Sequence record: MK308676.1
Strand: one strand, 5' to 3'
DNA length: 64,000 bases
The notes under the pieces are model-generated. The model had not been told where the DNA came from. It saw nothing but the letters and a program-made list of their open reading frames with translations, and searched no databases. Shown in pieces: positions 10,822 through 55,201 of the stretch (positions are counted from its first letter, which is position 1; each line of letters begins with the position of its first letter). A program made the position numbers and the translations under genes.

Positions 10822-10854
10822 CGAAGTCACATCCCATTGGAGGACATATTGTTA

Positions 10855-12306: not shown

Positions 12307-12403
12307 GTGGATTCCTTGCGTCGAATCTTTTGAGTCGCTAAACAACGGGGACGCCCGTAGCGACAGATTTTTATTCTTTCATTGTTCTCCGGAGAACAAA
12401 ACC

Positions 12404-40621: not shown

Positions 40622-41548
40622 ATGGCTTACACAGATTATAACTTCGACCCTACAGCCGAAGCGCCTGCCAACCTCATCTCTCAAGAGGTACATGCGTTGG
40701 ACATGGCTACGTTTGTAGGCGTCATTCCTGACCAAGGTGCCTTCTTTGAAAAGGGACTGGTCGTGGAAGCACGAGCGAGTTCGTCTGACCCTTGGGTTGA
40801 ACTAACTCCTTATTTCGACTTTGTCTTCTCTCCTCCATTCGTAGATGCCGGTGCGAGAACAACCCGTAAACAGGTATTCTCTTACATCGTGTTGAATGAA
40901 GACCGAGGCGTCTATTCCGACGTCCGTTTAACATACCAAGCAATCGGTAAGTACCGCGATTCAGAAATGTTCACTTTACTAAATGCAGCTACTTTCGACC
41001 GCAGCCTGTCTGCTGAATGGGTAGCGTTCTCGAGCTACATCGACACGATGTCGCACGTGACGCGCGAAGAGACATTGGTTGGGAAGGGTACTCTAGAAGT
41101 TCTAGCCGCAATGGTAGATAAGTGGACTGAAGCTATCCAGAACCCGCACGCTCAAGGGAAGAACCTAGGGCAAGACGTGGCTCGCTTAGAACAGAAAGTC
41201 GCCAAAGCACTAACGACAGATGCTTACGCCGAACTAACCGCACAGAATGACTTCAGTCAGGCAGTTGTTTCAGGTACAGCATACGAAGTGAAAGTTACTG
41301 ACGACGAAGTAGAGCTACATAAAGGCATGCTTCTAATCAAGTCGTCAACAGGGGATGCGTATAGCGTAGACGTACTAGGCCGTAAAGCCGGCTCTACTGT
41401 GCACTCTGCTTTATTTAGCCAGAGCCATAACAACGGGGTTTTAGGGACCGTAGCCGTCACTCGCTCTTCTGACGCAATTGTTATCCGCGTGACTCCTTCT
41501 GTCGCAGGCACCATGTACTATAAAACTGTTTCAGAAATCAGAGGCTAG
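40622..41548 (+). CDS. baseplate/fibre-attachment protein, paralogue 2
   Basis: N-terminal YNFDPTAEAPANLISQE motif. Confidence 0.6.
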   Translation: MAYTDYNFDPTAEAPANLISQEVHALDMATFVGVIPDQGAFFEKGLVVEARASSSDPWVELTPYFDFVFSPPFVDAGARTTRKQVFSYIVLNEDRGVYSDVRLTYQAIGKYRDSEMFTLLNAATFDRSLSAEWVAFSSYIDTMSHVTREETLVGKGTLEVLAAMVDKWTEAIQNPHAQGKNLGQDVARLEQKVAKALTTDAYAELTAQNDFSQAVVSGTAYEVKVTDDEVELHKGMLLIKSSTGDAYSVDVLGRKAGSTVHSALFSQSHNNGVLGTVAVTRSSDAIVIRVTPSVAGTMYYKTVSEIRG

Positions 41549-41553
41549 TAAAG

Positions 41554-43116
41554 ATGAATAATCTTCGTAAATACATAGGGCTAAAGTTAGCCCATTGGGG
41601 TAAGTTCGTGTTCCCTTACGGCGCGATGACCGCCCAAAGAACCACTGACGGAGAAGACGGCGCCGCATTTATCGACTCCGACTTAAACGCTTTAAGACTG
41701 CATTTGGGCGGGACATATAAACAGCAAGCCTCGTTGGTTTATAATCCTGCGGCCATTGTCTCCGATACGAACGAAACCGTCCCAGGTATGCTCCGTGCGG
41801 TTGATACATCTGGCGGCCCTATTGTTGTAGACCTAGACCCGACTCTTCCTGCGGGCTCAATGGTGGGCTATATTGACGTTACGGGTACGTGGGCAACGAA
41901 TAAGTTTTCTCTAAGGGCAGCCGCGAATATCCAAGGCGAAGCCGTTAAGGAGTATACCACGGCGTTTGGGTCCATTCAGTTAATCAAGCATGCGACTGCC
42001 GGCTGGATTCCATTTGGTGGCGGAGTAGGTGGCGGAGAAGGAGGCTCGGGAATTGGCCTCCCGGAAGGGGAGCTGGTCCATGGTACGTCCTATACCTTAA
42101 AGGTAGGTGTCCCTGCGTTACTCGACTTAGGCAAGACCTTCACAACGACCGGGTTTAACGTTCACTTTGAAAGAACGATGGATTACACTGCGGCCGATTG
42201 GGAATATACGCTGCCGAACGTCACATCGCTCCACTTACCTGAAGTCTATAACGTGAAAGCCGACCCCACGCAATCCGGTGACGCTGTGGCCGACCCAGAA
42301 GCCGGCCACTGGAAACTACCTGCCGACCCTGGACGTGCTATCCTAAAGCACCCTACCTTAAAGAAATGGATGCTCGTCCGTTTGGATGTCGCTCAAGAGT
42401 TCTTCCTTCAGATTGACGAAGAAGAATACGACCACCCTGCGAGAGTACAGACATGGGCATCAGTCGATGCCGGTACGGGCGAAAGGACTATTCTGCCAAA
42501 CGCCGAAATAAAACTAACAGACCTGACTTTAACTCTGCCTTTACCACCAAGTGGCGCAGTGGGAGATACGGTCGCATTCTACGACATATGGAAACTCGCT
42601 TCATTCGCGAATGTGATTCTAGAGGTAGACGGCGCGCGGTCTTTAGACATGGACGGGAGAAGCTTTGCTATCGACGTCGATGGTGCCTCCGCCGAAATAC
42701 AAGCCGTGCAACAGCGTGGCTGGGTAGCGGTCCGCTGGAACGTCGGCGCCGACCCGATGAATGACGAAGCCCCACATAGTAACTTAGTCGTAGGCAGCAT
42801 AAGTCACGACTCTACTGACGACTACACGTCATCCAATGGTTCAATCGAGCCAACTACGGAAGGCAGTGACGTCAAAGTAATGAATATTACCGAAGCAACC
42901 ACAATTCAGCCCCCACTTTTGAAGTCAGGTCCTGTTACTTGGCTCACTTACAAAATCGTACAAGGCAACACAGCATACCCTGTGGAGTTTACTAGCGATT
43001 ACGTAATCGTTGATGGGGTAGAGGCCTCCAAGGCACCTAACTCAGTTACGTGGGCCAGAGTTCTGGTCTCGGGTGACGGTAAGTACGATGTGTGGTTGTC
43101 TTCACGTCCTTTATAA
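41554..43116 (+). CDS. tail-fibre base with two T4 gp34-like repeats and a C-terminal adaptor domain
   Basis: VDTSGGPIVV.L...G..VGYIDVTGTWATN and LTLPLPPSGAVGDTVAFYD repeats; C-terminal YKIVQGNTAYPVEF...SGDG domain. Confidence 0.6.
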   Translation: MNNLRKYIGLKLAHWGKFVFPYGAMTAQRTTDGEDGAAFIDSDLNALRLHLGGTYKQQASLVYNPAAIVSDTNETVPGMLRAVDTSGGPIVVDLDPTLPAGSMVGYIDVTGTWATNKFSLRAAANIQGEAVKEYTTAFGSIQLIKHATAGWIPFGGGVGGGEGGSGIGLPEGELVHGTSYTLKVGVPALLDLGKTFTTTGFNVHFERTMDYTAADWEYTLPNVTSLHLPEVYNVKADPTQSGDAVADPEAGHWKLPADPGRAILKHPTLKKWMLVRLDVAQEFFLQIDEEEYDHPARVQTWASVDAGTGERTILPNAEIKLTDLTLTLPLPPSGAVGDTVAFYDIWKLASFANVILEVDGARSLDMDGRSFAIDVDGASAEIQAVQQRGWVAVRWNVGADPMNDEAPHSNLVVGSISHDSTDDYTSSNGSIEPTTEGSDVKVMNITEATTIQPPLLKSGPVTWLTYKIVQGNTAYPVEFTSDYVIVDGVEASKAPNSVTWARVLVSGDGKYDVWLSSRPL

Positions 43117-43126
43117 GGAGTAAGGA

Positions 43127-46100
43127 ATGAATCCCGAAGCCAAGCAAGTTGGCCATTTAGAGAGCGACGTTAAAGGTCGCTCTTTTGACCGATACAAAAT
43201 AAAAGGCTCTCTGTCTTTAAACCCGCCTTTGGGCGGAGTGCAACCGCCTTTTCTAGCATATACGCAAAAGGATGGAAACCGCCAAATAGGCACTGTCTCA
43301 CTTTGGATACGTCGAAGAGGTGTGGCAAACAAGTCCCCCTCTACAACGGACGAGACTATATTTAGCCATCAGGCGTCATCGACTACGGCCTCTTACGGCG
43401 GAATGGGATTCGATTCCAGCGGCCATCTAGCCCACTTCATGTCTGACGGCACCGCTACGCAGTACGGCATGATAACGAAAGAGCGCTTTGTAGACTGTTC
43501 TCGCTTCTACCATATTGTGGTTCACTGGAATACATGGATATCGGATGCTAACCAACGCATGCGCATGTTCGTTGACGGCAAGGAAATCAAATCGTTCATT
43601 CACTTTACCATGCCGCCGCTCGGCTACCAGGGGAAAGTGCATAATGCGGCTTATCCGTTTACCATCGGTCACGTTCCGGGACTGTCTGCTTATAATTACT
43701 TCGCTTTAAATGCCGAGATTGCAGACTTTGCCCTAGTTGATGGCCAGGCACTATTCCCGAAAGACTTTGGGCACTTTGATACCCAAGATAACTGGCGTCC
43801 AAGCTTCCCGAGCTTCGAAGGATGGGGACCTAACTCTCTGTTTTTGACCTGGGATAAACAGGCTAACGGAATGACCTCGCATGTCATTAATCGCCCTTCG
43901 CAATATGCCCCGGATGAGACCGACGATAAGAAGCCTATCTCTACGGTGCCTACGCCAGGTATTAAAGCCGACATCACCATACACAAGTCGTACAACCACA
44001 CGTCAAACCAACATATGTTCTTGCAGGACTCAGTCCGCGGAGACGGCTGGTTCACTACGTTCTCAGAAGCTACGATTAACTCGCGCTACCATGGTCGACC
44101 TGCGCCGGCACCCAATGGGGAAGATGAACACTTAAGGTTCAGCGGCTCCTTTAACTGGGAGAAACGTACGGATAATGAGCCGACATATTGGACACACTTC
44201 CTCTTTGCTACGGGACCCGAACACGGCATCAGTATCGTTCCTCACGATGGTACCGCCGCAGAAAAGAGAATTGAGCACGGTCTGGGGCGTAAGCCGGACT
44301 TAGCCATAAACGTGGTCCAGGAATCCGGAGCAAGCTACCCGATGTATACTTGGGCCAAAGGCTTTACGGATACTAACGACGATTCTCGCCTAAATCTCCA
44401 TAATGGCTCAGGGGTCTTTACAGCACCTGGAGCAGACCACTGGCGAAACTCCTTAACGGACGAAACCTATTTCGGATTCGGTAGTGGGAGCGCGAACAAC
44501 AGCGCATCTGGTAGAAACTTCATCACGTATTTCTTTGCGTCCGTTCCCGGAAAGTCCCAGTACTTTAAATGGGAACATCGCGGGTCTAACACTAGGACGC
44601 GTTTTGAATGCGGTTTCCGCCCGCGCTTCTTCTTCTGGAAGACGGCAACGCCGTCGGGTGAGACTGCCGATGTCGGTGCTTGGGTGGTTGTTGACTGTCG
44701 AGACGGTACGGCTTGGGAATTCGACCGCACGCGCGGCGGATACTACTCTTACAGTGCGACTTACTTCAATCCGGCTGAGGTAGACGATACCGGTTTCTCA
44801 ATGGGCCACGACCTGGCCAGCATAGACGGCATTATCATGGCCTTCGCGGACGAGTCGGACCTAAACCGCTGTGCCAAGTCAATAATGAACGATAACCGTG
44901 TTCGGCCGATTAACTTCCATGGCACGGCGGACATCAGTGACGCAACTCCAGATAACCCAGGTGTAATCCTTAGCTGGAATAATGCTAACCGCTGGGCATC
45001 CGCAAACGGAGCAGCTCACCAGAGCCAGAGAGCCACGGAAGGCGGTTATCGCCTAGAGCTTTCACATACGCGTACCAATACCGCGGTAGGCTTAGGGCTT
45101 TCTCGCTCATTGCCGGAAAGCGGTAAGTGGTACTTTGAGGTAGATAGTTGCTATACGTTCGTTTTATGCGGCTACCAATTCATGGACGGTGCCCAGAACG
45201 GATACGACTACTACGACTACGTCAAAGATACGCCGGGGTACGTATATGCTGGCGGCGTAAAGAACACACGCAGAAGTCACTACATTGCCTTGGATATGGA
45301 TGCGCGGACATTACATGTCACTACCTCCGACGGCAAGGTGTTCACTCTACCGGTTCCAGACGCCGACGAACGCACTACGGGCGATTATCAGTTCTTCGTA
45401 TCCTCTAACGTCGCGTCTAAAGATACGGCCTCCATCAACTTAGGGCAGCGCCCTTTTGTAAATGAGATGCCAGTGGGCTACCGTCCTCTGAACGACCTCG
45501 GCAACTATCAGGAAAACTCGATTGAGCCTGAGAAATACTTCGACAACTTCATTTACAATGGCCTGCAAGCTTGCCATCAGGACATGTCGTCTACGTGGGC
45601 TTACTGGGGCGTGAAGTCTTTTGAAATCGACGGCGAACTTTACCTAGCCCGCCGCCGCACGCACAGGATAGCGAACCCGCCGGTTGCCGCGGACTGGGTT
45701 AACCAAGGACATGTGGAAATATGGCTCTGGAACAGACATACTAAGAAGTTCAACGAACATCATACCTTGGCCATGCCTTCGGGCGGATACGCAATAGATG
45801 TGAAGTCGATAGATGGAGAGACGTATCTTTCTGCGGGGTCACACTACAACGGCTCACACGACATCACTGGCGGAGCATACCTCTTTAGATGGAACCGGAC
45901 ACACAAGAGATTCGAAACATTAGTTCGCCGCAATGAAGGTACCGGGCACATAGGAACCGAGATTTTCGACATCGATGAAGACCATTTGGGCTGGATAATG
46001 TCATCTCACCGCAACGGTACTGTCTTTGACTTGGATTCTCACTTCTTTAAAGTGGAGAAACAAACAGGCAATGTTGTAAAGGTCCAGGCTATCCATACGG

Positions 46101-48832
46101 CCGGGGCACACGGCGTATCGACTGAGGTCTTTGAGGGAGAAACGTGGGTCACTATTTCGGAGTATCGTACTGGCGCAAATGGAGCTCAACTTGGAAACAT
46201 TCCGCAAAGAAGTTGGCGCTATGACCCGACCACCAGCGAGTTAGTGGCCGCCCCAGGTCTAACTACTGGACAGTATGCCGCAGTGGTACAGAATAAACTA
46301 TTCGCGCACTCGGGTAACTTATATTGCCTGGTTTCATCTCGTCATACGGCCAACGTTTGGACGGAGTATACTAGCCTGGGCATGTTTAAGCTAAATGCCG
46401 CTAAAGACGGCTGGGACCAAATCACCTCTATGGGCTCAATTGGCGCCAGCGAAGTAAGCGTACTGAAGAAAGATGACGGAGTTTACATCAGTGTCCCTTG
46501 TTATTACAACGGCACGTCAGTAGCATCCCGTCAGAACTACGTAGCGTTTAGCACGATTGCTTTCTTTAACCCGCAAACAGAGACGTTGATTTCCCACGAG
46601 ACGTGGCGTGGTGTGGCTCAGACAGGTGCCGACTTCTTTGAGGACGATGGTGACTTCTATTTGGCCACGACGTCTACTTTGGACGATAGCTACAGCGCGA
46701 CATGGATGGGCGTGCAAAAGTTTGCCGATAAGAACTTATCTGGATTCATTACTCGGGCCCAGTTCGGCAGTGACTCAGTCTACGACTCTGTGCGCATTGA
46801 TGACGCCGACGGAGAGTACGTCCTGATGGTAGAACACGTGAAAGAATCTTCTCGCAGTCAAAGATTGTCAGACATTCAAATTCACGAGTACAACCCGACC
46901 ACAAAGAGTATATCGCGCATAGGCACGCGCTCATCTCACGGCTGTCATGCCTTGGACGCTAAGAAGATTGGCGGCAAGTGGTACCTCGCGTCGGTCAATC
47001 ATTCAAACGCCAGTACCGACACTACCGGCGGCGCCATTAACATTTATGTCTGGAATGAAACTACCAAAGACTTAGACTTCGTCATATCGTCACCCGTACA
47101 CGGCTGTATAGAGGCGAAGTGGTTCGAGTCCGACGGTAAGACATATGTTTCCATTACGTCTAATCGCAGCGGTTCGAACTATGGACAGCCACTGGGTACG
47201 TTCTTGTTCGACCCAGCGTCTGTAGGTAGCGAGCTCACAGTCAAACCGACTTTGTCGGGCTCAGGCCATTTCGGTCTAGACCTTTATGAGTTCAAAGGAG
47301 AAACCTTCGGCTTTATCGGCGGTTCAGCCGCGTCTTCTTCTGGCGGCTATCATACGGCCTTTATAAAGTGGTATCCTGACTCGGAGACTTGGGGCGTTCA
47401 TCAAAACCAAATCGCAGGTTCCAATATTCCGCATGGTTACGGTCGCTTCTTTGAAGCGAATGGACGACTGTATCTTCTTCTGGGCGCAGACCGCATCGGA
47501 GGCACACCAAACGCAACAACGGTTTGCCAGCTTTACCGTTACAGCGAAGCGACGCAGAGGATGTATTTCGTCAATGAGGTTCATGCTCCCGGAGCACGAA
47601 ACTTCAATGTCGTTGAATACGAGGGCGACATCTATGCGGCCATGGCTACGTGGGGTACGCCCGAGAGTAACAATCGCGGACTGGACCCGTATGACTGGAC
47701 GGACAACCTCCTGCTTAAGTTTGATGCAGCAGACGAGACGTTCTACCTAGAAGCGGTTTATCCAGCGCACCATTCGGTTTGTCATAAGTTACACCTGATG
47801 AACGACGGTAATCTGTTCATAGCGGCGCATAGCCACACGACGAACAATACCTTTAGTGCTCCTAACTTATGGCTACAAGTTAAGAAAGGTGCAGCGGCGA
47901 TGCAGCACAACACCTTGACGGTCCCGACCGACTTTGTCTGGCTCAAGTCGCTTTCTGGCCCTGCTAACTCACATAAGCAGTTCGCTAAGAAGGTAGGTTG
48001 GGAAAGGCAACTAACGTCCGACACGGCAGACGCGGCAAGCTTTACTAACGGCCAGCATATTTTCGGTGTCTACAAACACGGAGTTCGTTTAGCGTATTCG
48101 TCATCAGCAAACGTCGCGCGCCTAGCTTACTCGGTGTATGCCTGGAAAGCTGCCCCAGAGGCGGGCTTTGATTGTACAGTCCACGAAGGTAGTGGCGGCA
48201 CACAGCATGCCCTCCCTTACGATATGGGCGACAAGCAAGCCACGCTCGGCATCATTAAGAGCATCGATGTTTCCGGCAACTGGATGGTTCAAGGACCTAT
48301 CTTGAAATCTGTAAACAACCGAGTGCTTTACTTAAATGGTACCGGGGCCGCACAAGACAACTCATCCGACGGCTACATGTCTATGTTCTACAACGTAGGC
48401 CACTACGTTCTCGGGAACCAGGATGTGTCTAACGACCACGTAAACCGCAATGGGCAGAAATACATGGGCCTATGGTTCCGTAGTATAGAAGGCCAGGTTA
48501 AAGTGGGTCGCTATTCGGGCACGGGCCAAGTCGATGGCGATTTCGTTCCGCTGTCATTTAGCGCCCGCTGGATAATGATAAAGAGTGAAGCGAGTTCCAA
48601 CAACTGGGCGGTCTATGACTTGAACAACGGAGCTAACGTTCGAAACGACGTGACGCACATCATCTATCCTAATCTCTCGCAGAGTATGGGAGAGCCGGTA
48701 ACGGATAAGATAGAAGTAAGTGCCGGCGGTTTCCGCCCTATCGGTGCCGGTAACATCCATAACCAAAACGGACAGCCTTATGTCTTCATCGCCATAGCGG
48801 ACGACCCGTTTGGTACATCTAACGCTTACTAA
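43127..48832 (+). CDS. giant fibre/receptor-binding protein A: LamG (ConA-like) + SPRY + 14 EPTP/EAR-like repeats
   Basis: GTVSLWIRR/FYHIVVHW LamG motifs; SGKWYFEV...INLGQRPF SPRY; 14 repeats at 45563-47890; ends FIAIADDPFGTSNAY. Confidence 0.7.
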   Translation: MNPEAKQVGHLESDVKGRSFDRYKIKGSLSLNPPLGGVQPPFLAYTQKDGNRQIGTVSLWIRRRGVANKSPSTTDETIFSHQASSTTASYGGMGFDSSGHLAHFMSDGTATQYGMITKERFVDCSRFYHIVVHWNTWISDANQRMRMFVDGKEIKSFIHFTMPPLGYQGKVHNAAYPFTIGHVPGLSAYNYFALNAEIADFALVDGQALFPKDFGHFDTQDNWRPSFPSFEGWGPNSLFLTWDKQANGMTSHVINRPSQYAPDETDDKKPISTVPTPGIKADITIHKSYNHTSNQHMFLQDSVRGDGWFTTFSEATINSRYHGRPAPAPNGEDEHLRFSGSFNWEKRTDNEPTYWTHFLFATGPEHGISIVPHDGTAAEKRIEHGLGRKPDLAINVVQESGASYPMYTWAKGFTDTNDDSRLNLHNGSGVFTAPGADHWRNSLTDETYFGFGSGSANNSASGRNFITYFFASVPGKSQYFKWEHRGSNTRTRFECGFRPRFFFWKTATPSGETADVGAWVVVDCRDGTAWEFDRTRGGYYSYSATYFNPAEVDDTGFSMGHDLASIDGIIMAFADESDLNRCAKSIMNDNRVRPINFHGTADISDATPDNPGVILSWNNANRWASANGAAHQSQRATEGGYRLELSHTRTNTAVGLGLSRSLPESGKWYFEVDSCYTFVLCGYQFMDGAQNGYDYYDYVKDTPGYVYAGGVKNTRRSHYIALDMDARTLHVTTSDGKVFTLPVPDADERTTGDYQFFVSSNVASKDTASINLGQRPFVNEMPVGYRPLNDLGNYQENSIEPEKYFDNFIYNGLQACHQDMSSTWAYWGVKSFEIDGELYLARRRTHRIANPPVAADWVNQGHVEIWLWNRHTKKFNEHHTLAMPSGGYAIDVKSIDGETYLSAGSHYNGSHDITGGAYLFRWNRTHKRFETLVRRNEGTGHIGTEIFDIDEDHLGWIMSSHRNGTVFDLDSHFFKVEKQTGNVVKVQAIHTAGAHGVSTEVFEGETWVTISEYRTGANGAQLGNIPQRSWRYDPTTSELVAAPGLTTGQYAAVVQNKLFAHSGNLYCLVSSRHTANVWTEYTSLGMFKLNAAKDGWDQITSMGSIGASEVSVLKKDDGVYISVPCYYNGTSVASRQNYVAFSTIAFFNPQTETLISHETWRGVAQTGADFFEDDGDFYLATTSTLDDSYSATWMGVQKFADKNLSGFITRAQFGSDSVYDSVRIDDADGEYVLMVEHVKESSRSQRLSDIQIHEYNPTTKSISRIGTRSSHGCHALDAKKIGGKWYLASVNHSNASTDTTGGAINIYVWNETTKDLDFVISSPVHGCIEAKWFESDGKTYVSITSNRSGSNYGQPLGTFLFDPASVGSELTVKPTLSGSGHFGLDLYEFKGETFGFIGGSAASSSGGYHTAFIKWYPDSETWGVHQNQIAGSNIPHGYGRFFEANGRLYLLLGADRIGGTPNATTVCQLYRYSEATQRMYFVNEVHAPGARNFNVVEYEGDIYAAMATWGTPESNNRGLDPYDWTDNLLLKFDAADETFYLEAVYPAHHSVCHKLHLMNDGNLFIAAHSHTTNNTFSAPNLWLQVKKGAAAMQHNTLTVPTDFVWLKSLSGPANSHKQFAKKVGWERQLTSDTADAASFTNGQHIFGVYKHGVRLAYSSSANVARLAYSVYAWKAAPEAGFDCTVHEGSGGTQHALPYDMGDKQATLGIIKSIDVSGNWMVQGPILKSVNNRVLYLNGTGAAQDNSSDGYMSMFYNVGHYVLGNQDVSNDHVNRNGQKYMGLWFRSIEGQVKVGRYSGTGQVDGDFVPLSFSARWIMIKSEASSNNWAVYDLNNGANVRNDVTHIIYPNLSQSMGEPVTDKIEVSAGGFRPIGAGNIHNQNGQPYVFIAIADDPFGTSNAY

Positions 48833-48842
48833 GGAGTAAGAA

Positions 48843-49262
48843 ATGCGTTCATTTTCTAAGAAATTTGGACGCGGCCCTGCCTCTCAAATCAGTAAAGGCA
48901 CCAAGAGCGCGGGTTTCCGCGCCGATGGTGCGCTCCTGGTCACAGGCAGTGTCGTAAACACCCCTATCACTTTGCCCTATGCTGCAAACGTGGAGCTATC
49001 CTTAGCAGATAGCGATACGCAGCATCTAGAACTAGCTGGCGATGTGCATATTACTGCGCCGGAGCTAAGAGTAGGTGGGTCCTGGAAAATCTATATAAGG
49101 CAAGATGCGACAGGCGGACACGATGTAACCTTCGGGGCTAACCTAAAGAACATCTATGGTACACCGGTGTTGTCTGCCGCAAACGCGACGACGTTAATGA
49201 CCCTAATCGGTCGAGGGGATGGTAATTTTGATTACACCCTAACGGCCGTTGCCACGATTTAA
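48843..49262 (+). CDS. small fibre adaptor protein
   Basis: GGSWKIYIRQDATGGHDVTF...RGDG domain resembling the C-terminus of 41554..43116. Confidence 0.55.
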   Translation: MRSFSKKFGRGPASQISKGTKSAGFRADGALLVTGSVVNTPITLPYAANVELSLADSDTQHLELAGDVHITAPELRVGGSWKIYIRQDATGGHDVTFGANLKNIYGTPVLSAANATTLMTLIGRGDGNFDYTLTAVATI

Positions 49263-49282
49263 ACTAAACAAACGAGGTTAAC

Positions 49283-52200
49283 ATGCTTCTACCAAACATT
49301 GACGGTGGGGTTGTTAGTAAAGCAAGGGGCGATATCAATGTCGCCCCTCCTCTTTACGACCCGGAAGGCTCAATATTCCTAGATGGCCGCGACGGCGAAG
49401 GCGGCATGTTACAGTTCCGCCCGGAAACTCCATCGGACTCTACGAAATGGTGTTATTCTATCTGGATAAAGAATGGTGGGTTCAGCTACAGTGACCGGCA
49501 CTTCACGCTGCTTGGCGCTGTAAACCAGAACGGTATTCCGTCGGCACTTAACACTTCTCGGCTTGACGACAACATGGCATATATAGCCATCGACGATTCG
49601 AGCACCTTTAAGTTAAGTAATATTACGAATAACGCAACTATTGACACCTACACTCTCCCGATTAAATTTAAAGACTCGGCCGACTGGCAGCATTTGTTTG
49701 TTCGTTTTGACACCACTCGCGACATACTAGAACTGTTCGTCAATGGGGTTTTCGCAGGCGATGTCGTCGTGGCTAAAGATATCTTGAGGTTCGGCGATAC
49801 TTCCCACTATCACTACATCGGAGCAGATTCGTATTCTCGTACTCGAGATGCCTATTTTACAGACCCAGCACTTATCTTCGGGGAGGGGCAGCTGGATGTT
49901 AATGATTTTGGTTACACTGACGAACACGGCGTGTGGCGTCCGAAGGACCTAACGCAATCTTTACCGAAAAGTATTTGGAAAGGGAGCTCTTTTTACCTAC
50001 AGCCGGGTAAAACGCCTAGGTTTACCGAAGAGGCCGAAGGCGGCATCGCGCATGGTCACAAATATCAACGTGGTTTCCAGAGATTCAGAGTCGGCTTTGA
50101 GCCAGACATGGTTATGGTTTTCTCTACCAAGTATGGTTTTGCCGAAGGCGCCGACTTTACCTTTAAAGAGTTGCCAGAACTCTCCATCAATGCATCAAAC
50201 GAAGTGGGTGCCGTCGCGGACCCAAATGGGGTAAAATATTTCCACGATGGTTTTTCCATGGGAACTTCCGGGAACTTCCATAACGAGAACGGTTTCCCTT
50301 ACTCTTACTTGGCCTTTAAGAAAGGAGCTAAGTACGGCATCGACATCATTCATTATACGGGTGACGGCCAAGACAATCGCCGGGTCGCCCACGAGCTGGA
50401 ACAGCGCCCGCTTTCTACTTGGATTATTCCAGTCGACGTCAACGCCAACCGAACATATAACCATATCGAGTTAGGACCCAATCGCGTCATGACCCTTGAG
50501 GATGGCGAGCTAACCGCAAGCACGGGCTACATACGTAACCTGACGGACAAAGAAGTTGTGGTCAGCAACTCAGCGAACGTCAATGCCAGCGGCGTACGCT
50601 ACGCAATGATTTGTTTTGGTAATAAACAGGGCGTTATGTCCGTGGAACATCTTGTTGGTCCCGGCAATAGTCTACATTCTGGGTCCACTGAGACGCCGAT
50701 TGATTTCCACGGGCTGGTTGCATTTACTCGCCGGATGGCAGGTAGCGGTAATCGCGCACTAGACATTATTACCAACGACTCCGTGCGTTCTATTTCGAGC
50801 GCGTACGCGGTGGCCTATCCGAACAACAGTGCCAATAACCCCCAGTTCTTCAGCAGCAATCAGTTAAACTGGTTAACGACCGTCGCCGAAACAATCGGCT
50901 ATGCCGCTAGGGCAGATACGCGGTCAATCTTTAAGGCATGTAAGTCTGTAGTCAACGACGTTCAGTTAATCCCTCGTCGTATGTCGACGCATGATGCTTT
51001 GTCCGACGATAGTCCTTTCAGGAACTTAGGCGTCTGGAAAAACGCAGAGACGAATAGCACTTCGAGCTTCCACAGCGGCGGGCTTGGGGCGCACCTAGGC
51101 AATGGCGCGACGGCACAGGCCAAATGGAGCAAGTCGATACGCGGACGCTGTTACTGGGAAGTCAACGTCGAGTCCTCAGGCAGCGGCTACTACTATTTGG
51201 TCGGCTTAACGGGCAACCCGGGCTACACTTCGGCTGCTTACATCGACTGGTCGTACTATGTCGTTTATTACGCTAATAATGGAACAATACTCAGTTCTCC
51301 TCCAGGCACTGGCGGTGAGCAATTAGGGACGACAACCGGCGGCGGTCATAGACATATTTACAGTATGTTGTGGGACCCGGAAATACGTACGCTTAAAATG
51401 TATCGTGACGGAAGCCTTCTTTTCGAACAAGACATGAGTGCTTATGATTTACCGGACTCGATATATCCGTACATACGCCACGCCTCGGGAGCACAATCCA
51501 CAGTCTTCGCGATGAACGACGGGCGCTTCCCGTTTTTGTATCCTGAGCTTGCCGATAATGCACCTTCTCTTATGGAGGATGGCCTTAAGCCAATCGCGGA
51601 CATAAAGAACAGCCAGGTAGCTTTTAAGCCGGTTGCGTACAAAGCGGGCGATAACTCGGGCCATCTGTTCTCTTATACTGGACAGCCGGCATCCACGACA
51701 TGTAACATGTTCGAGGCAGACGGTAAACTGTATCTCTATAAGGCCAACTTCGGTGATGGTTCGACGCACCACGTCAACGATGAGCTAATTCGCATTAATG
51801 AGGACGGCTCTTTCGAAGTAGTGCTGGAAGGGCAGTACGGCAGCGCCACCTATGACACTCGCCATTTCGAGTCCAACGGCAGACATTTCCTCATTGTCTG
51901 CGACTACAATAAGGGGGCCTGGGGGAGCGCTAACACAGGTATCGGCATAATCACTTACGAGTTTCATCCTAAGACAGAAACGCTAACGACTATCTCGGTT
52001 TTACCTAACGGTGGCGTGAACAGGCTATCGCTTTACGAGTTTAACGGTGAACTGTTCTTAGCTCGTTGTGTGTGGGGCACCTCGTATGAAAACATCCGCA
52101 TTTACAAATGGCAGCCGGACCACTTAACCTGGAAGGAAGGAGGCTACGAGGCTCTTACAAATGCCACCGCGGCACAGTTCTGGGAACGTGACGGAACACT

Positions 52201-53650
52201 CTATCTGTCTTGTGCTGCTTTGATGACGGCGGGCCGTAAGAGTGCGACGTATCGAGTCGACCCGGAAACAGGGAACCTTGCTCTCGTGTTCGCAGGGCCT
52301 AACGTAAACCAAGCGCGCTCTTTGGCAGTCAATACGGCTAAAGACGGTAACACCTACATGTTGATGTCATACACGGGAACGAGCAACAAGCTCTTCAAGT
52401 GGGACCCTGTTAACGAGGACTGGATTGAGGATGTCGCGCCTGGGTCCTGGGCAAACTGCTACGGAATGAGCACCTTCAAAGAAGGAGAAGAGGTTTACTT
52501 CGCAATGGCGAATGCGGAATATACTTCCTCAAACGTACTGCATCACTTTGACCCGGTTACGAAGGGGCTGACTCCTATCGTTACGGCGGCTTCACAAAAC
52601 GCACACGATGCTCAAAGCATTAAGTATCGCGGCGTGTGGTATACGGCATTCGCGAACCACCGCACGTCGAGCAGCTATGCCCAAGGCTACATCACTGTGG
52701 TGACCTCTAAAGTTGACCCCGACACAGGAATATTGAAAGCAGGTCGCTTCATTGAGATGCCTAAGGGCGCTGACTTAATGTGGGTTAAGGACAGAACCAC
52801 ACCGGGCATTGCTCATCGTTTGTACAGTCCTAAGATGGTAGATAAGGAACTCTATCCGGGCCTAAACCTACCTGCTGGAAATTCGGCCACCGTAGACTGG
52901 CACGATGACGGCGTGTTGTTACAAGGCGGTTATACCGGACACAATACCGGCAACATTAACCACGTGGCATACTTCTGGAAAACTGGCCCTGAGTACGGCA
53001 TTGATTTCTCTTTGCAAACCTCGGGGCCGGATGGAACAACCGCGGTGACACACGAACACAATTGCGGCGACATCCCGGAAGTTTTGATGATAAAAGGACT
53101 AACGAATAACTCATCGTGGCATGTCAGGTTTGAGGATTTTGCGGATACCGATACCTTGCTCTTGGACACGAACACCGTAAGGTATACGTTGCCTGGCGCT
53201 AAGTATTGGGATAAGGCAAACTTCAATGAGAAGTCCGTATCGCTGTTCGCAGCGAATGCAATTGGTGTCAACCAAGGATTCGCAATGTTGGCTATTCGTT
53301 CCGTCCCGGGCTATTCAAAAACCGGTTTTTATTGGGGCAATGGCAACGCGTCGGGTATCGATTTTAACCTTGGATTTAAACCAGCATGGATGTTGGTCAA
53401 GATTGAAAACGTCGTCGGTAACGATTGGGTAATCTTCGATTCGTCGCGTTCACCGTTTAACAAGGACGGGATGGCGAGATTGCGAGTTAACGGTACTCAG
53501 GTTGAGGACGCAGCGGAAAATAACGACATCTTCTTTACGTCAACTGGCTTTAAGTGTGACGGTACGGGAAGTTCCATGAACCGACTGAATGCTAAGTACA
53601 CATTCATCGCGTTTGCGGAAAACCCGTTCGAACACACCAACGCTCGATAA
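49283..53650 (+). CDS. giant fibre/receptor-binding protein B: LamG + SPRY + 7 EPTP/EAR-like repeats (paralogue of A)
   Basis: KWCYSIWIK/WQHLFV LamG; RGRCYWEV SPRY; GFEPD/GFKPAW motifs; 7 repeats at about 51650-52730; ends FIAFAENPFEHTNAR. Confidence 0.7.
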   Translation: MLLPNIDGGVVSKARGDINVAPPLYDPEGSIFLDGRDGEGGMLQFRPETPSDSTKWCYSIWIKNGGFSYSDRHFTLLGAVNQNGIPSALNTSRLDDNMAYIAIDDSSTFKLSNITNNATIDTYTLPIKFKDSADWQHLFVRFDTTRDILELFVNGVFAGDVVVAKDILRFGDTSHYHYIGADSYSRTRDAYFTDPALIFGEGQLDVNDFGYTDEHGVWRPKDLTQSLPKSIWKGSSFYLQPGKTPRFTEEAEGGIAHGHKYQRGFQRFRVGFEPDMVMVFSTKYGFAEGADFTFKELPELSINASNEVGAVADPNGVKYFHDGFSMGTSGNFHNENGFPYSYLAFKKGAKYGIDIIHYTGDGQDNRRVAHELEQRPLSTWIIPVDVNANRTYNHIELGPNRVMTLEDGELTASTGYIRNLTDKEVVVSNSANVNASGVRYAMICFGNKQGVMSVEHLVGPGNSLHSGSTETPIDFHGLVAFTRRMAGSGNRALDIITNDSVRSISSAYAVAYPNNSANNPQFFSSNQLNWLTTVAETIGYAARADTRSIFKACKSVVNDVQLIPRRMSTHDALSDDSPFRNLGVWKNAETNSTSSFHSGGLGAHLGNGATAQAKWSKSIRGRCYWEVNVESSGSGYYYLVGLTGNPGYTSAAYIDWSYYVVYYANNGTILSSPPGTGGEQLGTTTGGGHRHIYSMLWDPEIRTLKMYRDGSLLFEQDMSAYDLPDSIYPYIRHASGAQSTVFAMNDGRFPFLYPELADNAPSLMEDGLKPIADIKNSQVAFKPVAYKAGDNSGHLFSYTGQPASTTCNMFEADGKLYLYKANFGDGSTHHVNDELIRINEDGSFEVVLEGQYGSATYDTRHFESNGRHFLIVCDYNKGAWGSANTGIGIITYEFHPKTETLTTISVLPNGGVNRLSLYEFNGELFLARCVWGTSYENIRIYKWQPDHLTWKEGGYEALTNATAAQFWERDGTLYLSCAALMTAGRKSATYRVDPETGNLALVFAGPNVNQARSLAVNTAKDGNTYMLMSYTGTSNKLFKWDPVNEDWIEDVAPGSWANCYGMSTFKEGEEVYFAMANAEYTSSNVLHHFDPVTKGLTPIVTAASQNAHDAQSIKYRGVWYTAFANHRTSSSYAQGYITVVTSKVDPDTGILKAGRFIEMPKGADLMWVKDRTTPGIAHRLYSPKMVDKELYPGLNLPAGNSATVDWHDDGVLLQGGYTGHNTGNINHVAYFWKTGPEYGIDFSLQTSGPDGTTAVTHEHNCGDIPEVLMIKGLTNNSSWHVRFEDFADTDTLLLDTNTVRYTLPGAKYWDKANFNEKSVSLFAANAIGVNQGFAMLAIRSVPGYSKTGFYWGNGNASGIDFNLGFKPAWMLVKIENVVGNDWVIFDSSRSPFNKDGMARLRVNGTQVEDAAENNDIFFTSTGFKCDGTGSSMNRLNAKYTFIAFAENPFEHTNAR

Positions 53651-53755: not shown

Positions 53756-54745
53756 ATGTCAATCCAAACGCTATACAAATACCAGTTCGACAAGTACGGA
53801 AATAACTCCGCTAACTTGATTCCAAATGAACCGGTGAAGTTCGATACTCCGCGTATCGTTCCTTTCGTACTGAGAGAAGGTAACTTCTATCAGAAAGACT
53901 TAACTATCCGAGATAAAGCAGACAACAGTTTATTGGTCTTAGGTACCGACTATAACCTAGTTGGCCTAGATGCTGACCTTACAGCAGAGACAGGCTTAAC
54001 TGTAGCAGGCGGTATCGAGTTAGCCGATAAAACATTCATCGGTGAATTGGAAGTTACCTATCGCTGCGTAGGTGGACCGCAAGGCGAATCGCGCGCTCTT
54101 TATCTGGAACTAATCGAAGCAATCACAAACGCAGGAACTAACCCTAGTGTTCTTTGGGAATCCATCATTGGTCGCCCTCAGCGCTTCCCGCCTGAAATCC
54201 ACTCACACTTACTGAGCGAACTGACTGAACTTGAGAAACTCTATCAGTCAATGCAGGACATGACTAATGCAATCGTCAACTCTAAGCCGATGTATGGTTC
54301 CAACCAAAACATCTTAGAACAGATTGAAGGCATCATTCAAATCCAGGCAGCGATGCAGTTAGCACTTAACCGTGTGGCTACAGGCGTAGGCTCAGTCGCG
54401 TTAATTAACCAAGTGCGTGATAATCTCGCTAACGTTCATAAGCAGTTCGATAAGACGACCAACACCGTTGGCGTTACTTGGGCAGACGTAGCAGTTATCC
54501 CTGAAGCGGACTTCAACAACGCACGCGGCGTCATCTCTATTGTTGATGCAACCGACTCCATGCAGATGGATTTCGATATTTCGTGGACTACCGCGAAAGA
54601 CCCGTCTTACACACACTATGGCCATATCGGCACAGATGAACTCATCAACGCGATGCAAGTCATTAAACAGTCAGGTAACGTTGTAGTTCAAATTCGAACC
54701 ACTAAAGACGCAACCGTCAAGACTAAATTTACTCACCTGCTTTAA
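53756..54745 (+). CDS. baseplate/fibre-attachment protein, paralogue 3
   Basis: N-terminal YQFDKYGNNSANLIPNE and WESIIGRPQRFPPEIHSH (compare WEDIVTPPTFPVTSHEH in 39613). Confidence 0.6.
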   Translation: MSIQTLYKYQFDKYGNNSANLIPNEPVKFDTPRIVPFVLREGNFYQKDLTIRDKADNSLLVLGTDYNLVGLDADLTAETGLTVAGGIELADKTFIGELEVTYRCVGGPQGESRALYLELIEAITNAGTNPSVLWESIIGRPQRFPPEIHSHLLSELTELEKLYQSMQDMTNAIVNSKPMYGSNQNILEQIEGIIQIQAAMQLALNRVATGVGSVALINQVRDNLANVHKQFDKTTNTVGVTWADVAVIPEADFNNARGVISIVDATDSMQMDFDISWTTAKDPSYTHYGHIGTDELINAMQVIKQSGNVVVQIRTTKDATVKTKFTHLL

Positions 54746-54754
54746 GGAGCACCC

Positions 54755-55201
54755 ATGAAGATTACTTTTCATTTCTTCGATAACCGCGCAATCGGTTCGC
54801 TACTTATCAAAGCACGCCTTTCCGAGCATTTCTCTCATGTGGGAATGGAGTTTGAGAACGGCGCGTTTATTCACAGCACTATGCTGCACGGCACCGTCAT
54901 GCAGAAACTTAGCGACCAGCCAACTGAGCCTCTTGCGTCGGTAACTATCGATGTAGACGAAGAAGCGTACATGGAAGCGTACGAATGGGCAGTTCATCAA
55001 GTGGGTGGCAAATACGACTACAAGGGAATCATTGGTTTCATGTTCGCTAAGAAATGGAACGATGAGAATGCGTTCTTCTGTTCTGAGCTAGGACGTAAAG
55101 TATTTGAAATCGCGACAGGGAAAATCCTGAAGTATTATAATTTGGTTACGCCCGGCGAATTACGCATGCTTGTAGCTATGCACAATCTAGACGGCAAGTA
55201 A
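54755..55201 (+). CDS. permuted papain-like NlpC/P60 enzyme (YiiX/YebB, DUF830-like)
   Basis: FSHVG (His), YDY and FFCSEL (Cys) in permuted order. Confidence 0.8.
   Translation: MKITFHFFDNRAIGSLLIKARLSEHFSHVGMEFENGAFIHSTMLHGTVMQKLSDQPTEPLASVTIDVDEEAYMEAYEWAVHQVGGKYDYKGIIGFMFAKKWNDENAFFCSELGRKVFEIATGKILKYYNLVTPGELRMLVAMHNLDGK

What the first reader, a model, noticed from the sequence alone, without database searches (positions are those of the whole stretch)
43127..53650. Two paralogous giant fibre proteins carry EPTP/EAR-like propeller cassettes (14 and 7 blades) plugged into the same site
Seen: both proteins share the frame LamG - repeat domain - SPRY - repeat domain - ...F(I)A(I/F)A(D/E)(D/N)PF..(S/T)NA. 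In A the frame is interrupted after EKYFDNFIYNG (45563-47890) by 14 repeats of about 50-58 aa (F.xDG..YL...S......IY.W.......F). In B it is interrupted after VAFKPVAYKAG (about 51650-52730) by 7 such repeats. Both then resume with (D/F)(F/L)(V/M)W(L/V)K. Knowledge: EPTP/EAR repeats form 7-bladed beta-propellers, best known from animal LGI1, TSPEAR and ADGRV1; marine-phage LamG/SPRY virion proteins normally run ...Y.G.G...GF.PD.VWIK without a break. Inference: a conserved scaffold with an exchangeable ligand-binding propeller slot, one propeller in B and two in A. I am not aware of this architecture being described for phiKZ-like phages.
Basis: partly seen in the sequence, partly recalled or inferred. 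Interest (0 to 1): 0.78.

Follow-up and report, generated by a model that had tools for sequence, protein, structure and literature searches.

The report
EPTP propellers nested in phage adhesins
Two giant tail-module proteins of a jumbo Vibrio phage carry one and two seven-bladed propellers of the EPTP/EAR family (best known from human LGI1) inserted into the same hairpin of a common marine-phage protein scaffold, which is a rare and undescribed way for a phage to add a likely binding module.

Summary
[quoted passage not shown] Protein A (43127-48832, 1901 aa) and protein B (49283-53650, 1455 aa) share the frame LamG - partial DUF7483 - SPRY - DUF7483. In both, the C-terminal DUF7483 is split near its start: by 14 blades in A and 7 in B. 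A blade profile built only from unrelated proteins scores A at 81 bits and B at 46 bits, against 7.8 for the best shuffle.

The inserts belong to the EPTP/EAR family. 25 of the 27 nearest relatives among 1.84 billion representatives carry PF03736. A profile hits only LGI1 in the PDB. The AlphaFold model of B's insert has 28 strands, and its seven best Foldseek hits are the human LGI1 EPTP domain (TM 0.81).

The syntenic orthologue of A in Vibrio phage GR7B has 8 residues where A has 783, so it is a natural empty slot. GR7B and a metagenomic relative keep the B-type insert. About 200 other DUF7483 proteins have no EPTP blades.

Virion location and ligand binding are inferred, not shown. A's second propeller is modelled only moderately well. 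I class this as a new variant of a known kind (modular phage adhesins), of moderate to good interest.

The parts
43127..48832 (+). Gene A (QAX96161.1, 1901 aa): LamG - partial DUF7483 - SPRY-like - [two EPTP propellers] - DUF7483
   Evidence: ORF. 100% identical to MK308674.1 167126-172831, annotated 'hypothetical protein'. Pfam DUF7483 151.5 bits and EPTP 31.2 bits. phrog_19943 virion structural protein and phrog_24898 tail fibre.
43283..43678 (+). A, LamG-like jelly roll (residues 53-184)
   Evidence: Pfam Laminin_G_3 34.4 bits against a cutoff of 27.6 on A 1-260.
44210..44821 (+). A, first (partial) DUF7483 copy (residues 362-565)
   Evidence: Pfam DUF7483 profile 124-273. Local profile positions 117-308, E 2e-16.
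44984..45496 (+). A, SPRY-like domain (about residues 620-790)
   Evidence: No direct Pfam hit. Collinear with the GR7B_00153 orthologue. Shares the 'SGKWY.EV' and 'GQRPF' landmarks with P0002-P0004, which carry PF00622. This assignment is inferred.
45524..45562 (+). A, pre-insert strand of the C-terminal DUF7483 (residues 800-812, ends '...FIYNG')
   Evidence: Last residues of the 11-812 BLASTP block against the empty-slot orthologue. Junction listing. Not placed by AlphaFold.
45563..46774 (+). A, EPTP propeller 1 (residues 813-1216, blades 1-7)
   Evidence: PF03736 24.4 bits. 7 blade-profile hits. AlphaFold pLDDT mostly 70-92 with 27-28 strands. Foldseek hit to LGI1 EPTP, TM 0.77.
46775..47896 (+). 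A, EPTP propeller 2 (residues 1217-1590, blades 8-14)
   Evidence: PF03736 23.4 bits. 7 blade-profile hits. AlphaFold gives an all-beta region with pLDDT 50-80, and the last blade is not modelled.
47909..48829 (+). A, remainder of the C-terminal DUF7483 (residues 1595-1901)
   Evidence: Pfam DUF7483 profile 19-330 at residues 1593-1894. BLASTP block 1596-1900 against GR7B_00153 790-1088.
48843..49262 (+). 139-aa ORF between A and B, conserved in the syntenic loci; possible fibre accessory or assembly protein
   Evidence: phrog_4549 tail fibre C-terminus. Its counterpart in L002 carries PF26209 Phage_phiTE_241_C. Aligned with the L002 and L006 counterparts and with the C-terminus of the 520-aa ORF.
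49283..53650 (+). Gene B (QAX96163.1, 1455 aa): LamG-like - partial DUF7483 - SPRY-like - [one EPTP propeller] - DUF7483
   Evidence: ORF. Pfam DUF7483 138.2 bits. PHROG hits. Collinear end to end with GR7B_00155 and P0010.
49400..49972 (+). B, LamG-like N-terminal domain (about residues 40-230)
   Evidence: By collinearity with GR7B_00155, which has Laminin_G_3 at 28.8 bits against 27.6. 4 of 7 N-terminal fragments of the family hit PF13385.
50174..50827 (+). B, first (partial) DUF7483 copy (residues 298-515)
   Evidence: Local DUF7483 profile hits at 298-346 and 349-515. The second Pfam stretch is reported.
51050..51562 (+). B, SPRY-like domain (about residues 590-760)
   Evidence: Aligned to P0010 610-729, where SPRY scores 35.1 bits, and to GR7B_00155 609-699, where it scores 27.0 bits. 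No direct hit in B.
51617..51649 (+). B, pre-insert strand (residues 779-789, '...VAFKPVAYKAG')
   Evidence: Junction listing. Not placed by AlphaFold. Its mapping to the profile is not significant on its own.
51650..52741 (+). B, EPTP-type seven-bladed propeller (residues 790-1153)
   Evidence: 7 blade-profile hits. AlphaFold gives 28 strands with pLDDT mostly 70-96. The seven best Foldseek PDB hits are human LGI1 EPTP, E 3e-16, TM 0.81. No direct PF03736 hit.
52745..53647 (+). B, remainder of the C-terminal DUF7483 (residues 1155-1455)
   Evidence: Pfam DUF7483 profile 27-330 at residues 1163-1448. Local profile positions 27-332.

Best explanation
A and B are paralogous proteins of the tail or baseplate-distal module of the jumbo, phiKZ-type Vibrio phage vB_VmeM-Yong. 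They use a scaffold that is widespread in marine phages: LamG jelly roll - partial DUF7483 - SPRY - DUF7483. All of these are lectin-like beta-sandwich modules.

Shown here: in both proteins the first hairpin of the C-terminal DUF7483 has been opened, and seven-bladed beta-propellers of the EPTP/EAR family are nested in it. B has one and A has two in tandem. The propeller in B begins with a strand ahead of the first full blade and has 28 strands in all.

Inferred: the propeller closes in the usual way, so its two ends lie side by side. That would let a whole propeller hang from a beta-turn without disturbing the host domain. Two such propellers in series would do the same.

Inferred function: the propellers are extra or alternative ligand-binding heads that recognise a structure on the Vibrio cell surface, alongside the LamG and SPRY modules. 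Gain or loss of the cassette would diversify what the virion sticks to. Evidence for such gain or loss is that A's orthologue in phage GR7B is empty and that the cassette sits at another site in a third relative.
For: Identity and context:
- The window is 100% MK308674.1.
- The neighbouring genes are tail or virion genes. Three ORFs share an N-terminal domain matching phrog_2163 (virion structural protein), and two of the three also match phrog_13857 (tail protein). phrog_4549 is a tail-fibre C-terminus. A third giant protein has CBM_5_12 modules and phrog_9851 tail fibre.
- In GR7B the syntenic cluster lies just downstream of a gp25-like baseplate gene.
- Homologues of the scaffold are annotated as tail fibre, virion structural, lectin or LamG proteins in pelagiphages, cyanophages and roseophages.

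Propellers:
- 14 and 7 blades.
- PF03736 passes its cutoff in both halves of A's insert.
- 25 of 27 nearest relatives are PF03736 proteins.
- The PDB profile search hits only LGI1, E 1.6e-22.
- B model: 28 strands, pLDDT 70-96 in the propeller. The top 7 Foldseek hits are LGI1 EPTP (E 3e-16, TM 0.81, rmsd 3.6-4.0 A). The next class is Kelch at 1e-10.
- A model: the best hit is LGI1, and the other hits are tandem double-propeller proteins.

Insertion:
- A 11-812 and 1596-1900 match residues 15-781 and 790-1088 of GR7B_00153. In that protein DUF7483 is matched uninterrupted over profile 1-330.
- In the five filled proteins the profile resumes at positions 14-27.

Conservation:
- The B-type architecture is kept at about 25% identity in GR7B_00155 and P0010. 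The A-type is kept in P0009.

Rarity:
- 80 of 85 IMG/VR DUF7483 ORFs and 90 of 117 metagenomic DUF7483 proteins have an uninterrupted C-terminal copy. None has EPTP blades.
- tblastn with a canonical EPTP propeller finds only Yong and GR7B among 50,697 phage records.
Against: - No proteomic or imaging evidence places A or B in the virion. The PHROG and GenBank names are themselves inherited annotations.
- No ligand is known for any microbial EPTP protein. The only characterised EPTP interaction, LGI1 with ADAM22/23, is protein-protein and has no bearing on bacteria.
- B has no direct PF03736 hit.
- In both models AlphaFold left the pre-insert strand unplaced (pLDDT about 30). The seventh blade of A's second propeller was also not modelled. 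The hairpin-insertion geometry therefore rests on sequence collinearity, not on a model.
- The tools returned no coordinates, so the distance between the ends of the insert could not be measured.
- A and B have no recognised N-terminal attachment domain.
Confidence: 0.7

Rival explanations
1. The propellers are enzymes rather than binding heads. They could be, for example, a lactonase/SGL-type hydrolase or a surface-polysaccharide depolymerase carried on the virion.
For: 5 of the 27 nearest relatives, and P0009, also give weak hits to the Pfam family 'Lactonase, 7-bladed beta-propeller'. One BFVD neighbour is named in that way. Virion-borne depolymerases are common in phages (general knowledge).
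Against: The lactonase hits are at or below the family cutoff (20.0 against 21.7 bits in P0009). The best sequence and fold matches are all to the non-catalytic LGI1 EPTP domain, ahead of any enzyme by four or more orders of magnitude in E-value. No catalytic family is hit in A or B themselves.
Confidence: 0.08
2. A and B are virion proteins, but the propellers bind non-host material such as chitinous particles, mucus or algal and coral surfaces. They would keep the phage where Vibrio lives rather than recognise the infection receptor.
For: The same gene cluster encodes a third giant protein with four CBM_5_12 chitin-binding modules. The hosts of Yong and GR7B are surface-associated marine vibrios. 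Several bacterial EPTP relatives look like cell-surface adhesins, carrying Big_5, PKD or PEP-CTERM domains.
Against: Nothing separates this reading from receptor binding at the sequence level. The scaffold family is annotated as tail fibre in podoviruses that have few other candidates for receptor binding. That argues for host recognition for the scaffold, though not necessarily for the insert.
Confidence: 0.15
3. The propellers have a mainly architectural role. They could act as a spacer, an oligomerisation platform or a docking platform for the neighbouring small proteins, with binding done by the LamG, SPRY and DUF7483 modules.
For: Propellers often serve as protein-protein platforms, and LGI1 EPTP itself binds a protein. 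Small conserved ORFs flank the genes. A's orthologue works without any propeller in GR7B.
Against: The propeller sequences evolve fast. A, B and their orthologues are closer to canonical EPTP proteins than to each other. That pattern is typical of surfaces under diversifying pressure and is not expected of a conserved assembly interface. The cassette is dispensable in one lineage and sits at a different site in another.
Confidence: 0.07

Closest known systems
EPTP/EAR domain of human LGI1 (PDB 5Y2Z, 5Y31, 8Y6B, 9KZC; Pfam PF03736)
   Same: A seven-bladed propeller with four strands per blade and repeats of about 45-55 aa. It is the only PDB family hit by the sequence profile and the best fold match for both models.
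   Different: About 10-12% identity. LGI1 is a secreted animal protein in which an LRR domain is followed by a terminal EPTP domain that binds ADAM22/23. Here the propeller is nested inside another domain of a phage protein, occurs singly or in tandem, and has no known ligand.
LamG-SPRY-DUF7483 'virion structural / tail fibre / lectin-like' proteins of marine phages (GR7B_00153, pelagiphage HTVC011P tail fibre, cyanophage and roseophage homologues, P0002-P0004)
   Same: The same domain order and the same C-terminal ending. GR7B_00153 is the syntenic orthologue of A, with 32% identity over 800 residues.
   Different: Their C-terminal DUF7483 is uninterrupted in 80 of 85 and 90 of 117 proteins surveyed, and none has EPTP blades. 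None of them has been characterised structurally or functionally, and no paper mentions DUF7483.
GR7B_00155 (Vibrio phage vB_VcorM_GR7B) and P0010/P0009 (metagenomic contig SRR13169030_335253)
   Same: True orthologues with the same nested architecture at the same site: 7 blades in the B-type and 14 in the A-type.
   Different: Only about 25% identical. All are unannotated 'hypothetical protein' entries. GR7B combines a filled B-type with an empty A-type.
vB_VhaM_pir03 ORF199 'EAR-like protein' (PMC7765460, table entry, IPR009039)
   Same: An EAR/EPTP repeat protein in a related jumbo Vibrio phage. A 548-aa viral protein, the same length as that ORF, appears among the BFVD fold matches.
   Different: It is a stand-alone protein of 548 aa, not nested in a DUF7483 scaffold, and the paper does not discuss it. 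It was not compared directly here.
Phage receptor-binding proteins with a propeller head (for example the five-bladed propeller of staphylococcal phage phi11 Gp45). Recalled from knowledge, not tested here.
   Same: A propeller used as the carbohydrate-binding platform of a tail-tip protein. This is the closest known way of working.
   Different: The blade number and family differ, and that propeller is part of a linear trimeric fibre rather than nested in a hairpin of another domain. No tool result links the two.

Membership tests
EPTP/EAR repeat family (Pfam PF03736) | Sequence match to PF03736 at or above the gathering score (21 bits) | tested here: met
   A: 31.2 bits for the whole protein, and 24.4 and 23.4 bits for the two halves of the insert. 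Orthologues: P0009 163.2, P0010 116.8, GR7B_00155 33.3 bits.
EPTP/EAR repeat family (Pfam PF03736) | The same criterion applied to protein B itself | tested here: inconclusive
   B's insert has no PF03736 hit up to E = 10. An independent blade profile made from PF03736 proteins scores B at 45.7 bits, against 7.8 for the best shuffle. B is collinear with P0010 and GR7B_00155, which both pass.
EPTP/EAR repeat family (Pfam PF03736) | Seven repeats of about 45-55 aa forming one closed seven-bladed, four-stranded propeller | tested here: met
   7 blades in B and 2 x 7 in A by profile. B model: 28 strands, pLDDT 70-96. A's first propeller: 27-28 strands. A's second propeller is weaker and its last blade is not modelled.
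EPTP/EAR repeat family (Pfam PF03736) | Closest solved structure is an EPTP domain | tested here: met
   The top 7 Foldseek PDB hits for B are LGI1 EPTP (E 3e-16 to 4e-14, TM 0.81), with the next class at 1e-10. The best hit for A is LGI1. The sequence profile hits only LGI1.
EPTP/EAR repeat family (Pfam PF03736) | Binding of an ADAM22/23-type partner, as in LGI proteins | not testable with these tools
   No bacterial counterpart is known. This is a property of the animal members, not of the fold.
DUF7483 (Pfam PF24299) | Sequence match above the gathering score (27 bits) | tested here: met
   A 151.5 bits and B 138.2 bits, with two stretches each.
DUF7483 (Pfam PF24299) | The domain is contiguous (profile 1-330 in one stretch) | tested here: not met
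   In A the match starts at profile position 19 (residue 1593), and in B at position 27 (residue 1163). The empty orthologue GR7B_00153 matches 1-330 in one stretch. In this respect A and B are variants of the family.
LamG / concanavalin A-like (Pfam PF13385 Laminin_G_3) | Sequence match above the gathering score (27.6 bits) | tested here: met
   A 1-260 scores 34.4 bits. A longer piece gave no hit. For B only the orthologue passes: GR7B_00155 at 28.8 bits.
SPRY (Pfam PF00622) | Sequence match above the gathering score (26.3 bits) | tested here: inconclusive
   No hit in A or B. The aligned regions of P0010 (35.1 bits) and GR7B_00155 (27.0 bits) pass. P0002-P0004 carry PF00622 at the equivalent place.
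Phage tail fibre / receptor-binding proteins | Encoded in the tail or baseplate module and similar to annotated tail-fibre families | tested here: met
   phrog_24898 tail fibre, phrog_19943 virion structural protein, and tail-type neighbours. A gp25-like baseplate gene lies upstream in GR7B.
Phage tail fibre / receptor-binding proteins | Physically present on the virion and binds a host receptor | not testable with these tools
   No proteome or structure of this phage group was found.
phiKZ-type jumbo phages | Split multisubunit RNA polymerase beta genes | tested here: met
   Three ORFs of the window hit RNA polymerase beta-subunit PHROGs as fragments. The pir03 paper reports a phiKZ-like sheath and terminase in this group.

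The most novel reading that the evidence does not exclude
The first hairpin of the DUF7483 sandwich is a general docking slot in the adhesins of marine phages. Evolution leaves it empty, fills it with a small beta domain, or fills it with one or two EPTP propellers. The EPTP cassette can move between equivalent hairpins of the repeated DUF7483 units.

The EPTP/EAR fold, so far discussed as an animal nervous-system module, would then have an old microbial and viral history as a surface-recognition head.
Probability: 0.4. Interest if true: 0.65.

Novelty: new variant of a known kind. Interest (0 to 1): 0.55.

Why it matters
Receptor-binding proteins decide which bacteria a phage can attach to, and they are the least predictable part of phage genomes.

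This case gives three things:
- A scaffold that is abundant in ocean viromes but uncharacterised. DUF7483 gave at least 574 hits in a single IMG/VR scan.
- A natural set of states at one defined hairpin: empty, one propeller or two propellers. That makes a clean comparative system for asking how nested domains are gained.
- Evidence that the EPTP/EAR propeller occurs in bacterial surface proteins and in phages. That bears on where the animal LGI/ADGRV1/TSPEAR module came from.

It also gives annotation pipelines a concrete rule. A DUF7483 match that starts near profile position 20 signals a nested domain upstream.

Tried and rejected
- MAFFT alignment of the three propellers came out one blade out of register, so I did not use it as a profile.
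- Word-based homologue searches were nearly empty. Whole B gave three scaffold hits. A's insert gave only itself.
- The IMG/VR scan with the B + P0010 alignment found nothing.
- phmmer of A's insert against PDB sequences found nothing. Only the profile did.
- Global alignments that mix full-length and fragment rows misplaced the N-terminal domains. The alignment for A's structure prediction therefore had good depth for only one propeller, which is probably why the second is weak.
- Mapping the short pre-insert strands onto a DUF7483 profile was not significant. The B-type strands matched the equivalent strand of the second internal unit equally well. I therefore rest the site assignment on collinearity.
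- Pairwise scores between propeller units gave no orthology signal. Each unit is closer to canonical EPTP proteins than to the others, so I make no claim about the order of gain, loss or duplication.
- DNA-level repeats: none.
- Two IMG/VR loci whose match began at the resume motif turned out to be a divergent strand and a contig end, not inserts.
- Literature searches for EPTP plus phage, for DUF7483, and for LamG/SPRY tail fibre found nothing relevant, apart from the pir03 table entry.
- I considered and rejected a single 14-bladed ring. The first seven blades close on their own and match a seven-bladed structure.

Transparency: notebook entry 1 holds a nine-position degenerate pattern for the blade core, and entry 2 holds a junction pattern. 

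Full report
WHAT THE WINDOW IS.
[quoted passage not shown] The three genes under it are deposited as 'hypothetical protein'. The window also holds split RNA polymerase beta genes and a giant tail protein with a peptidase domain. The one paper that mentions these phages groups them with the jumbo phages BONAISHI and pir03, which have a phiKZ-like sheath and terminase. 'phiKZ-like' is therefore fair in the broad sense.

THE OBSERVATION.
The ORFs are 43127..48832 (A, 1901 aa) and 49283..53650 (B, 1455 aa).
- A runs to '...EKYFDNFIYNG' at residue 812 and picks up the scaffold again at 'DFVWLK' (residue 1602).
- B runs to '...VAFKPVAYKAG' at residue 789 and picks up at 'DLMWVK' (residue 1164).

Between these points lie 14 units of 41-62 aa in A and 7 units of 45-56 aa in B, which align to each other. 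A profile made from these 21 units finds 14 and 7. That is circular for A and B. The same profile also finds exactly seven units in independent proteins that Pfam calls EPTP, and none in scaffolds without an insert.

The independent test is a profile made from 91 blades of non-window proteins only. It scores A at 81.2 bits and B at 45.7 bits. 400 shuffles of the two inserts never exceed 7.8 bits. The DNA has no repeats. The repeats are real, old and diverged.

WHAT THE INSERTS ARE.
- Pfam EPTP (PF03736) passes its gathering score of 21 bits in A as a whole (31.2) and in each half of the insert (24.4 and 23.4). B's insert gives no direct hit.
- An exhaustive HMMER search with A's insert against 1.84 billion representatives gave only 29 proteins at E <= 0.001. 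Of the 27 that are not from the window, 25 are PF03736 proteins, with a best E of 7e-104 and typically seven repeats. Some carry bacterial surface-protein domains (Big_5, PKD, PEP-CTERM), and one carries a Peptidase_S74 chaperone domain in a bacterial chromosomal context.
- A profile of B's region aligned with these relatives hits a single family in the PDB, human LGI1 (E 1.6e-22).
- AlphaFold2 on B 770-1455 gave mean pLDDT 77. The insert is at 70-96 and consists of 28 strands, which is seven blades of four. Foldseek against the PDB put seven LGI1 EPTP chains first (E 3e-16 to 4e-14, TM 0.81 on the EPTP-only chains, rmsd 3.6-4.0 A). Six-bladed Kelch proteins follow at 1e-10.
- AlphaFold2 on A 795-1901 was weaker (mean pLDDT 65), because the alignment could be made deep for only one propeller. 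The first seven blades are confident (27-28 strands, pLDDT mostly 70-92). The second seven are all-beta at pLDDT 50-80, and the last blade is not modelled. The best Foldseek hit is again LGI1 EPTP (TM 0.77). The other hits are proteins with tandem seven-bladed propellers, such as Elp2, DDB1, SF3B3 and BT4663.

I conclude that B carries one EPTP-type propeller and A carries two. A's second propeller rests more on sequence than on the model.

THE SCAFFOLD.
- DUF7483 (PF24299) is hit twice in each protein.
- A's N-terminus passes Laminin_G_3 (34.4 against 27.6 bits).
- SPRY is not hit directly in A or B. It is hit in the aligned regions of their orthologues P0010 and GR7B_00155 and in the insert-less relatives P0002-P0004.
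- The scaffold is very common in marine viromes. At least 574 IMG/VR stretches matched in one scan and 806 proteins in one search. GenBank homologues in pelagiphages, cyanophages and roseophages are named tail fibre, virion structural, lectin or LamG proteins.

WHERE THE INSERT SITS.
The key comparator is Vibrio phage vB_VcorM_GR7B (MT366760.1). Its syntenic cluster, just downstream of a gp25-like baseplate gene, has a 1089-aa orthologue of A and a 1457-aa orthologue of B.
- By BLASTP, A 11-812 matches GR7B_00153 15-781 (32% identity, E 2e-100), and A 1596-1900 matches 790-1088 (E 7e-22). The 783 residues 813-1595 of A therefore stand where GR7B_00153 has eight.
- Pfam matches DUF7483 in GR7B_00153 in one piece, profile 1-330.
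- In all five filled proteins the match resumes only at profile positions 14-27: A 19, P0009 19, B 27, P0010 21, GR7B_00155 22 by Pfam, and 14-27 by a local profile.
- Side by side, the empty scaffolds read 'Y-x-G', then a hairpin of 12-14 residues, then the 'D-x-x-W-x-K' strand. In the filled ones the propeller or propellers lie directly after the 'Y-x-G' strand.

The two paralogues therefore use the same site at the level of sequence.

What I could not show: AlphaFold left the short pre-insert strand unplaced in both models. That strand is also too short to map onto the profile with significance. The tools returned no coordinates.

HOW WIDESPREAD.
- The nested architecture is conserved at about 25% identity in GR7B (B-type) and in a metagenomic contig that carries both types in the same gene order (P0009 with 14 blades, P0010 with 7).
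- A third relative (P0007) has 14 blades at residues 440-1195, but the start of its C-terminal DUF7483 is uninterrupted. There the cassette sits elsewhere in the protein.
- Outside this small group I found none. 80 of 85 IMG/VR DUF7483 ORFs and 90 of 117 metagenomic DUF7483 proteins have an uninterrupted C-terminal copy, and none has EPTP blades.
- Of the 120 best hits to P0010's propeller + DUF7483 region, only P0009 and P0010 combine PF24299 with PF03736.
- tblastn with a canonical EPTP propeller against 50,697 phage records hits the propeller region only in Yong and GR7B.
- In BFVD only these same proteins combine both parts.

IS THE SLOT 'EXCHANGEABLE'?
Partly. It is empty, single or double within one orthologous group. 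In addition, six metagenomic DUF7483 proteins carry an unidentified domain of about 115-130 aa nested in the same hairpin region of another DUF7483 copy, a few residues downstream of the A/B site. About eleven others have an insert of about 105 aa between the first and second internal units. DUF7483 is thus an insertion-tolerant scaffold. I found no other domain at exactly the A/B position.

HOW IT PROBABLY WORKS.
Shown: nested seven-bladed EPTP-type propellers at one hairpin of a lectin-like scaffold, encoded in a tail gene module.

Inferred:
- The propeller's two ends lie side by side. B's model begins with a strand that precedes the first full blade, as in the usual ring closure. A whole propeller, or two in series, could then hang from a beta-turn.
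- The proteins are on the virion, and the propellers are additional binding heads for a Vibrio surface structure.
- Fast divergence of the propellers, together with gain, loss or relocation of the cassette, fits a role in recognition.

Rivals are an enzymatic role (weak lactonase hits only), adhesion to non-host material (a neighbouring giant protein has four chitin-binding modules), and a purely architectural role.

COMPARISON WITH WHAT IS KNOWN, AND NOVELTY.
The fold family is known (LGI1, ADGRV1, TSPEAR). The scaffold family is catalogued but uncharacterised, and no paper mentions DUF7483. Propeller heads on phage receptor-binding proteins are known in other families (from general knowledge). 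One related jumbo phage paper lists a stand-alone 'EAR-like protein' in a table without comment.

Nesting of EPTP propellers in a DUF7483 hairpin, in single and tandem form with a natural empty-slot orthologue, is not described in anything I could search. I rate it a new variant of a known kind, with interest 0.55.

SLIP NOTICE.
They describe repeats and were used to build nothing.

Noticed in passing
window 55218-59552 (+): A third giant protein of the same cluster (1444 aa) carries four CBM_5_12 chitin-binding modules and matches phrog_9851 tail fibre. The cluster thus encodes three large proteins with different putative binding modules.
   Followed up: partly
window 48843-49262 and 41554-43116 (+); L002:15496-15918; L006:12256-12681: The 139-aa ORF between A and B shares its C-terminal 70 or so residues with the C-terminus of the 520-aa ORF upstream of A, and with the syntenic small ORFs of both relatives. 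In the relatives this region is Pfam PF26209 (Phage_phiTE_241_C). It may be a fibre accessory or assembly domain.
   Followed up: partly
window 39613-40611, 40622-41548, 53756-54745 (+): Three proteins of about 310-330 aa share one N-terminal domain of about 110-230 residues (phrog_2163 in all three; phrog_13857 and phrog_7557 in some). They precede the giant genes. They may be the attachment adaptors that A, B and the third protein lack.
   Followed up: no
P0044, P0099, P0110, P0112, P0113, P0127 (metagenomic DUF7483 proteins): An unidentified, beta-looking domain of about 115-130 aa is nested in the first-hairpin region of their second DUF7483 copy, between a '...YTGN.G' strand and '...KFQPD..W.K'. 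Pfam does not recognise it.
   Followed up: partly
P0047, P0048, P0061, P0063, P0065, P0080 and others: In about eleven DUF7483 proteins the C-terminal copy is split between profile positions of about 109 and 101 by an insert of about 105 aa. This is a second insertion-tolerant point of the domain.
   Followed up: no
L003:10001-15598 (P0007, 1865 aa): The gene at the A position of a third relative has 14 EPTP blades at residues 440-1195, followed by an unassigned region of about 345 aa and an uninterrupted DUF7483 start. The cassette is therefore at a different site, possibly the equivalent hairpin of another internal unit. That locus has no B-type gene.
   Followed up: partly
L005:10001-13105 (P0006, 1034 aa): The closest relative of A's insert is a protein with seven canonical EPTP repeats and a C-terminal Peptidase_S74 (endosialidase chaperone) domain. 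It is encoded among bacterial housekeeping genes (grpE, purL, SAICAR synthase) and not in a phage.
   Followed up: partly
window 12251-17896 (+); 3817-6357, 7846-9234, 10852-12345 (-): A 1881-aa protein combines phrog_3201 tail fibre with an M23-type peptidase/endolysin domain at residues 1510-1730. Three neighbouring ORFs are fragments of RNA polymerase beta subunits, which is the phiKZ-type split polymerase.
   Followed up: no
window 43127-44116 (+): The Laminin_G_3 hit of A's N-terminus appeared when residues 1-260 were scanned (34.4 bits) but not when residues 1-330 were scanned. The hit depends on where the fragment is cut, so weak domains in these proteins are easily missed.
   Followed up: no
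window 54755-55201 (+): A 148-aa ORF between the adaptor-like gene and the third giant gene matches phrog_1128, 'enoyl-CoA hydratase/carnithine racemase-like', which is odd for a tail module. Pfam gives no hit.
   Followed up: no
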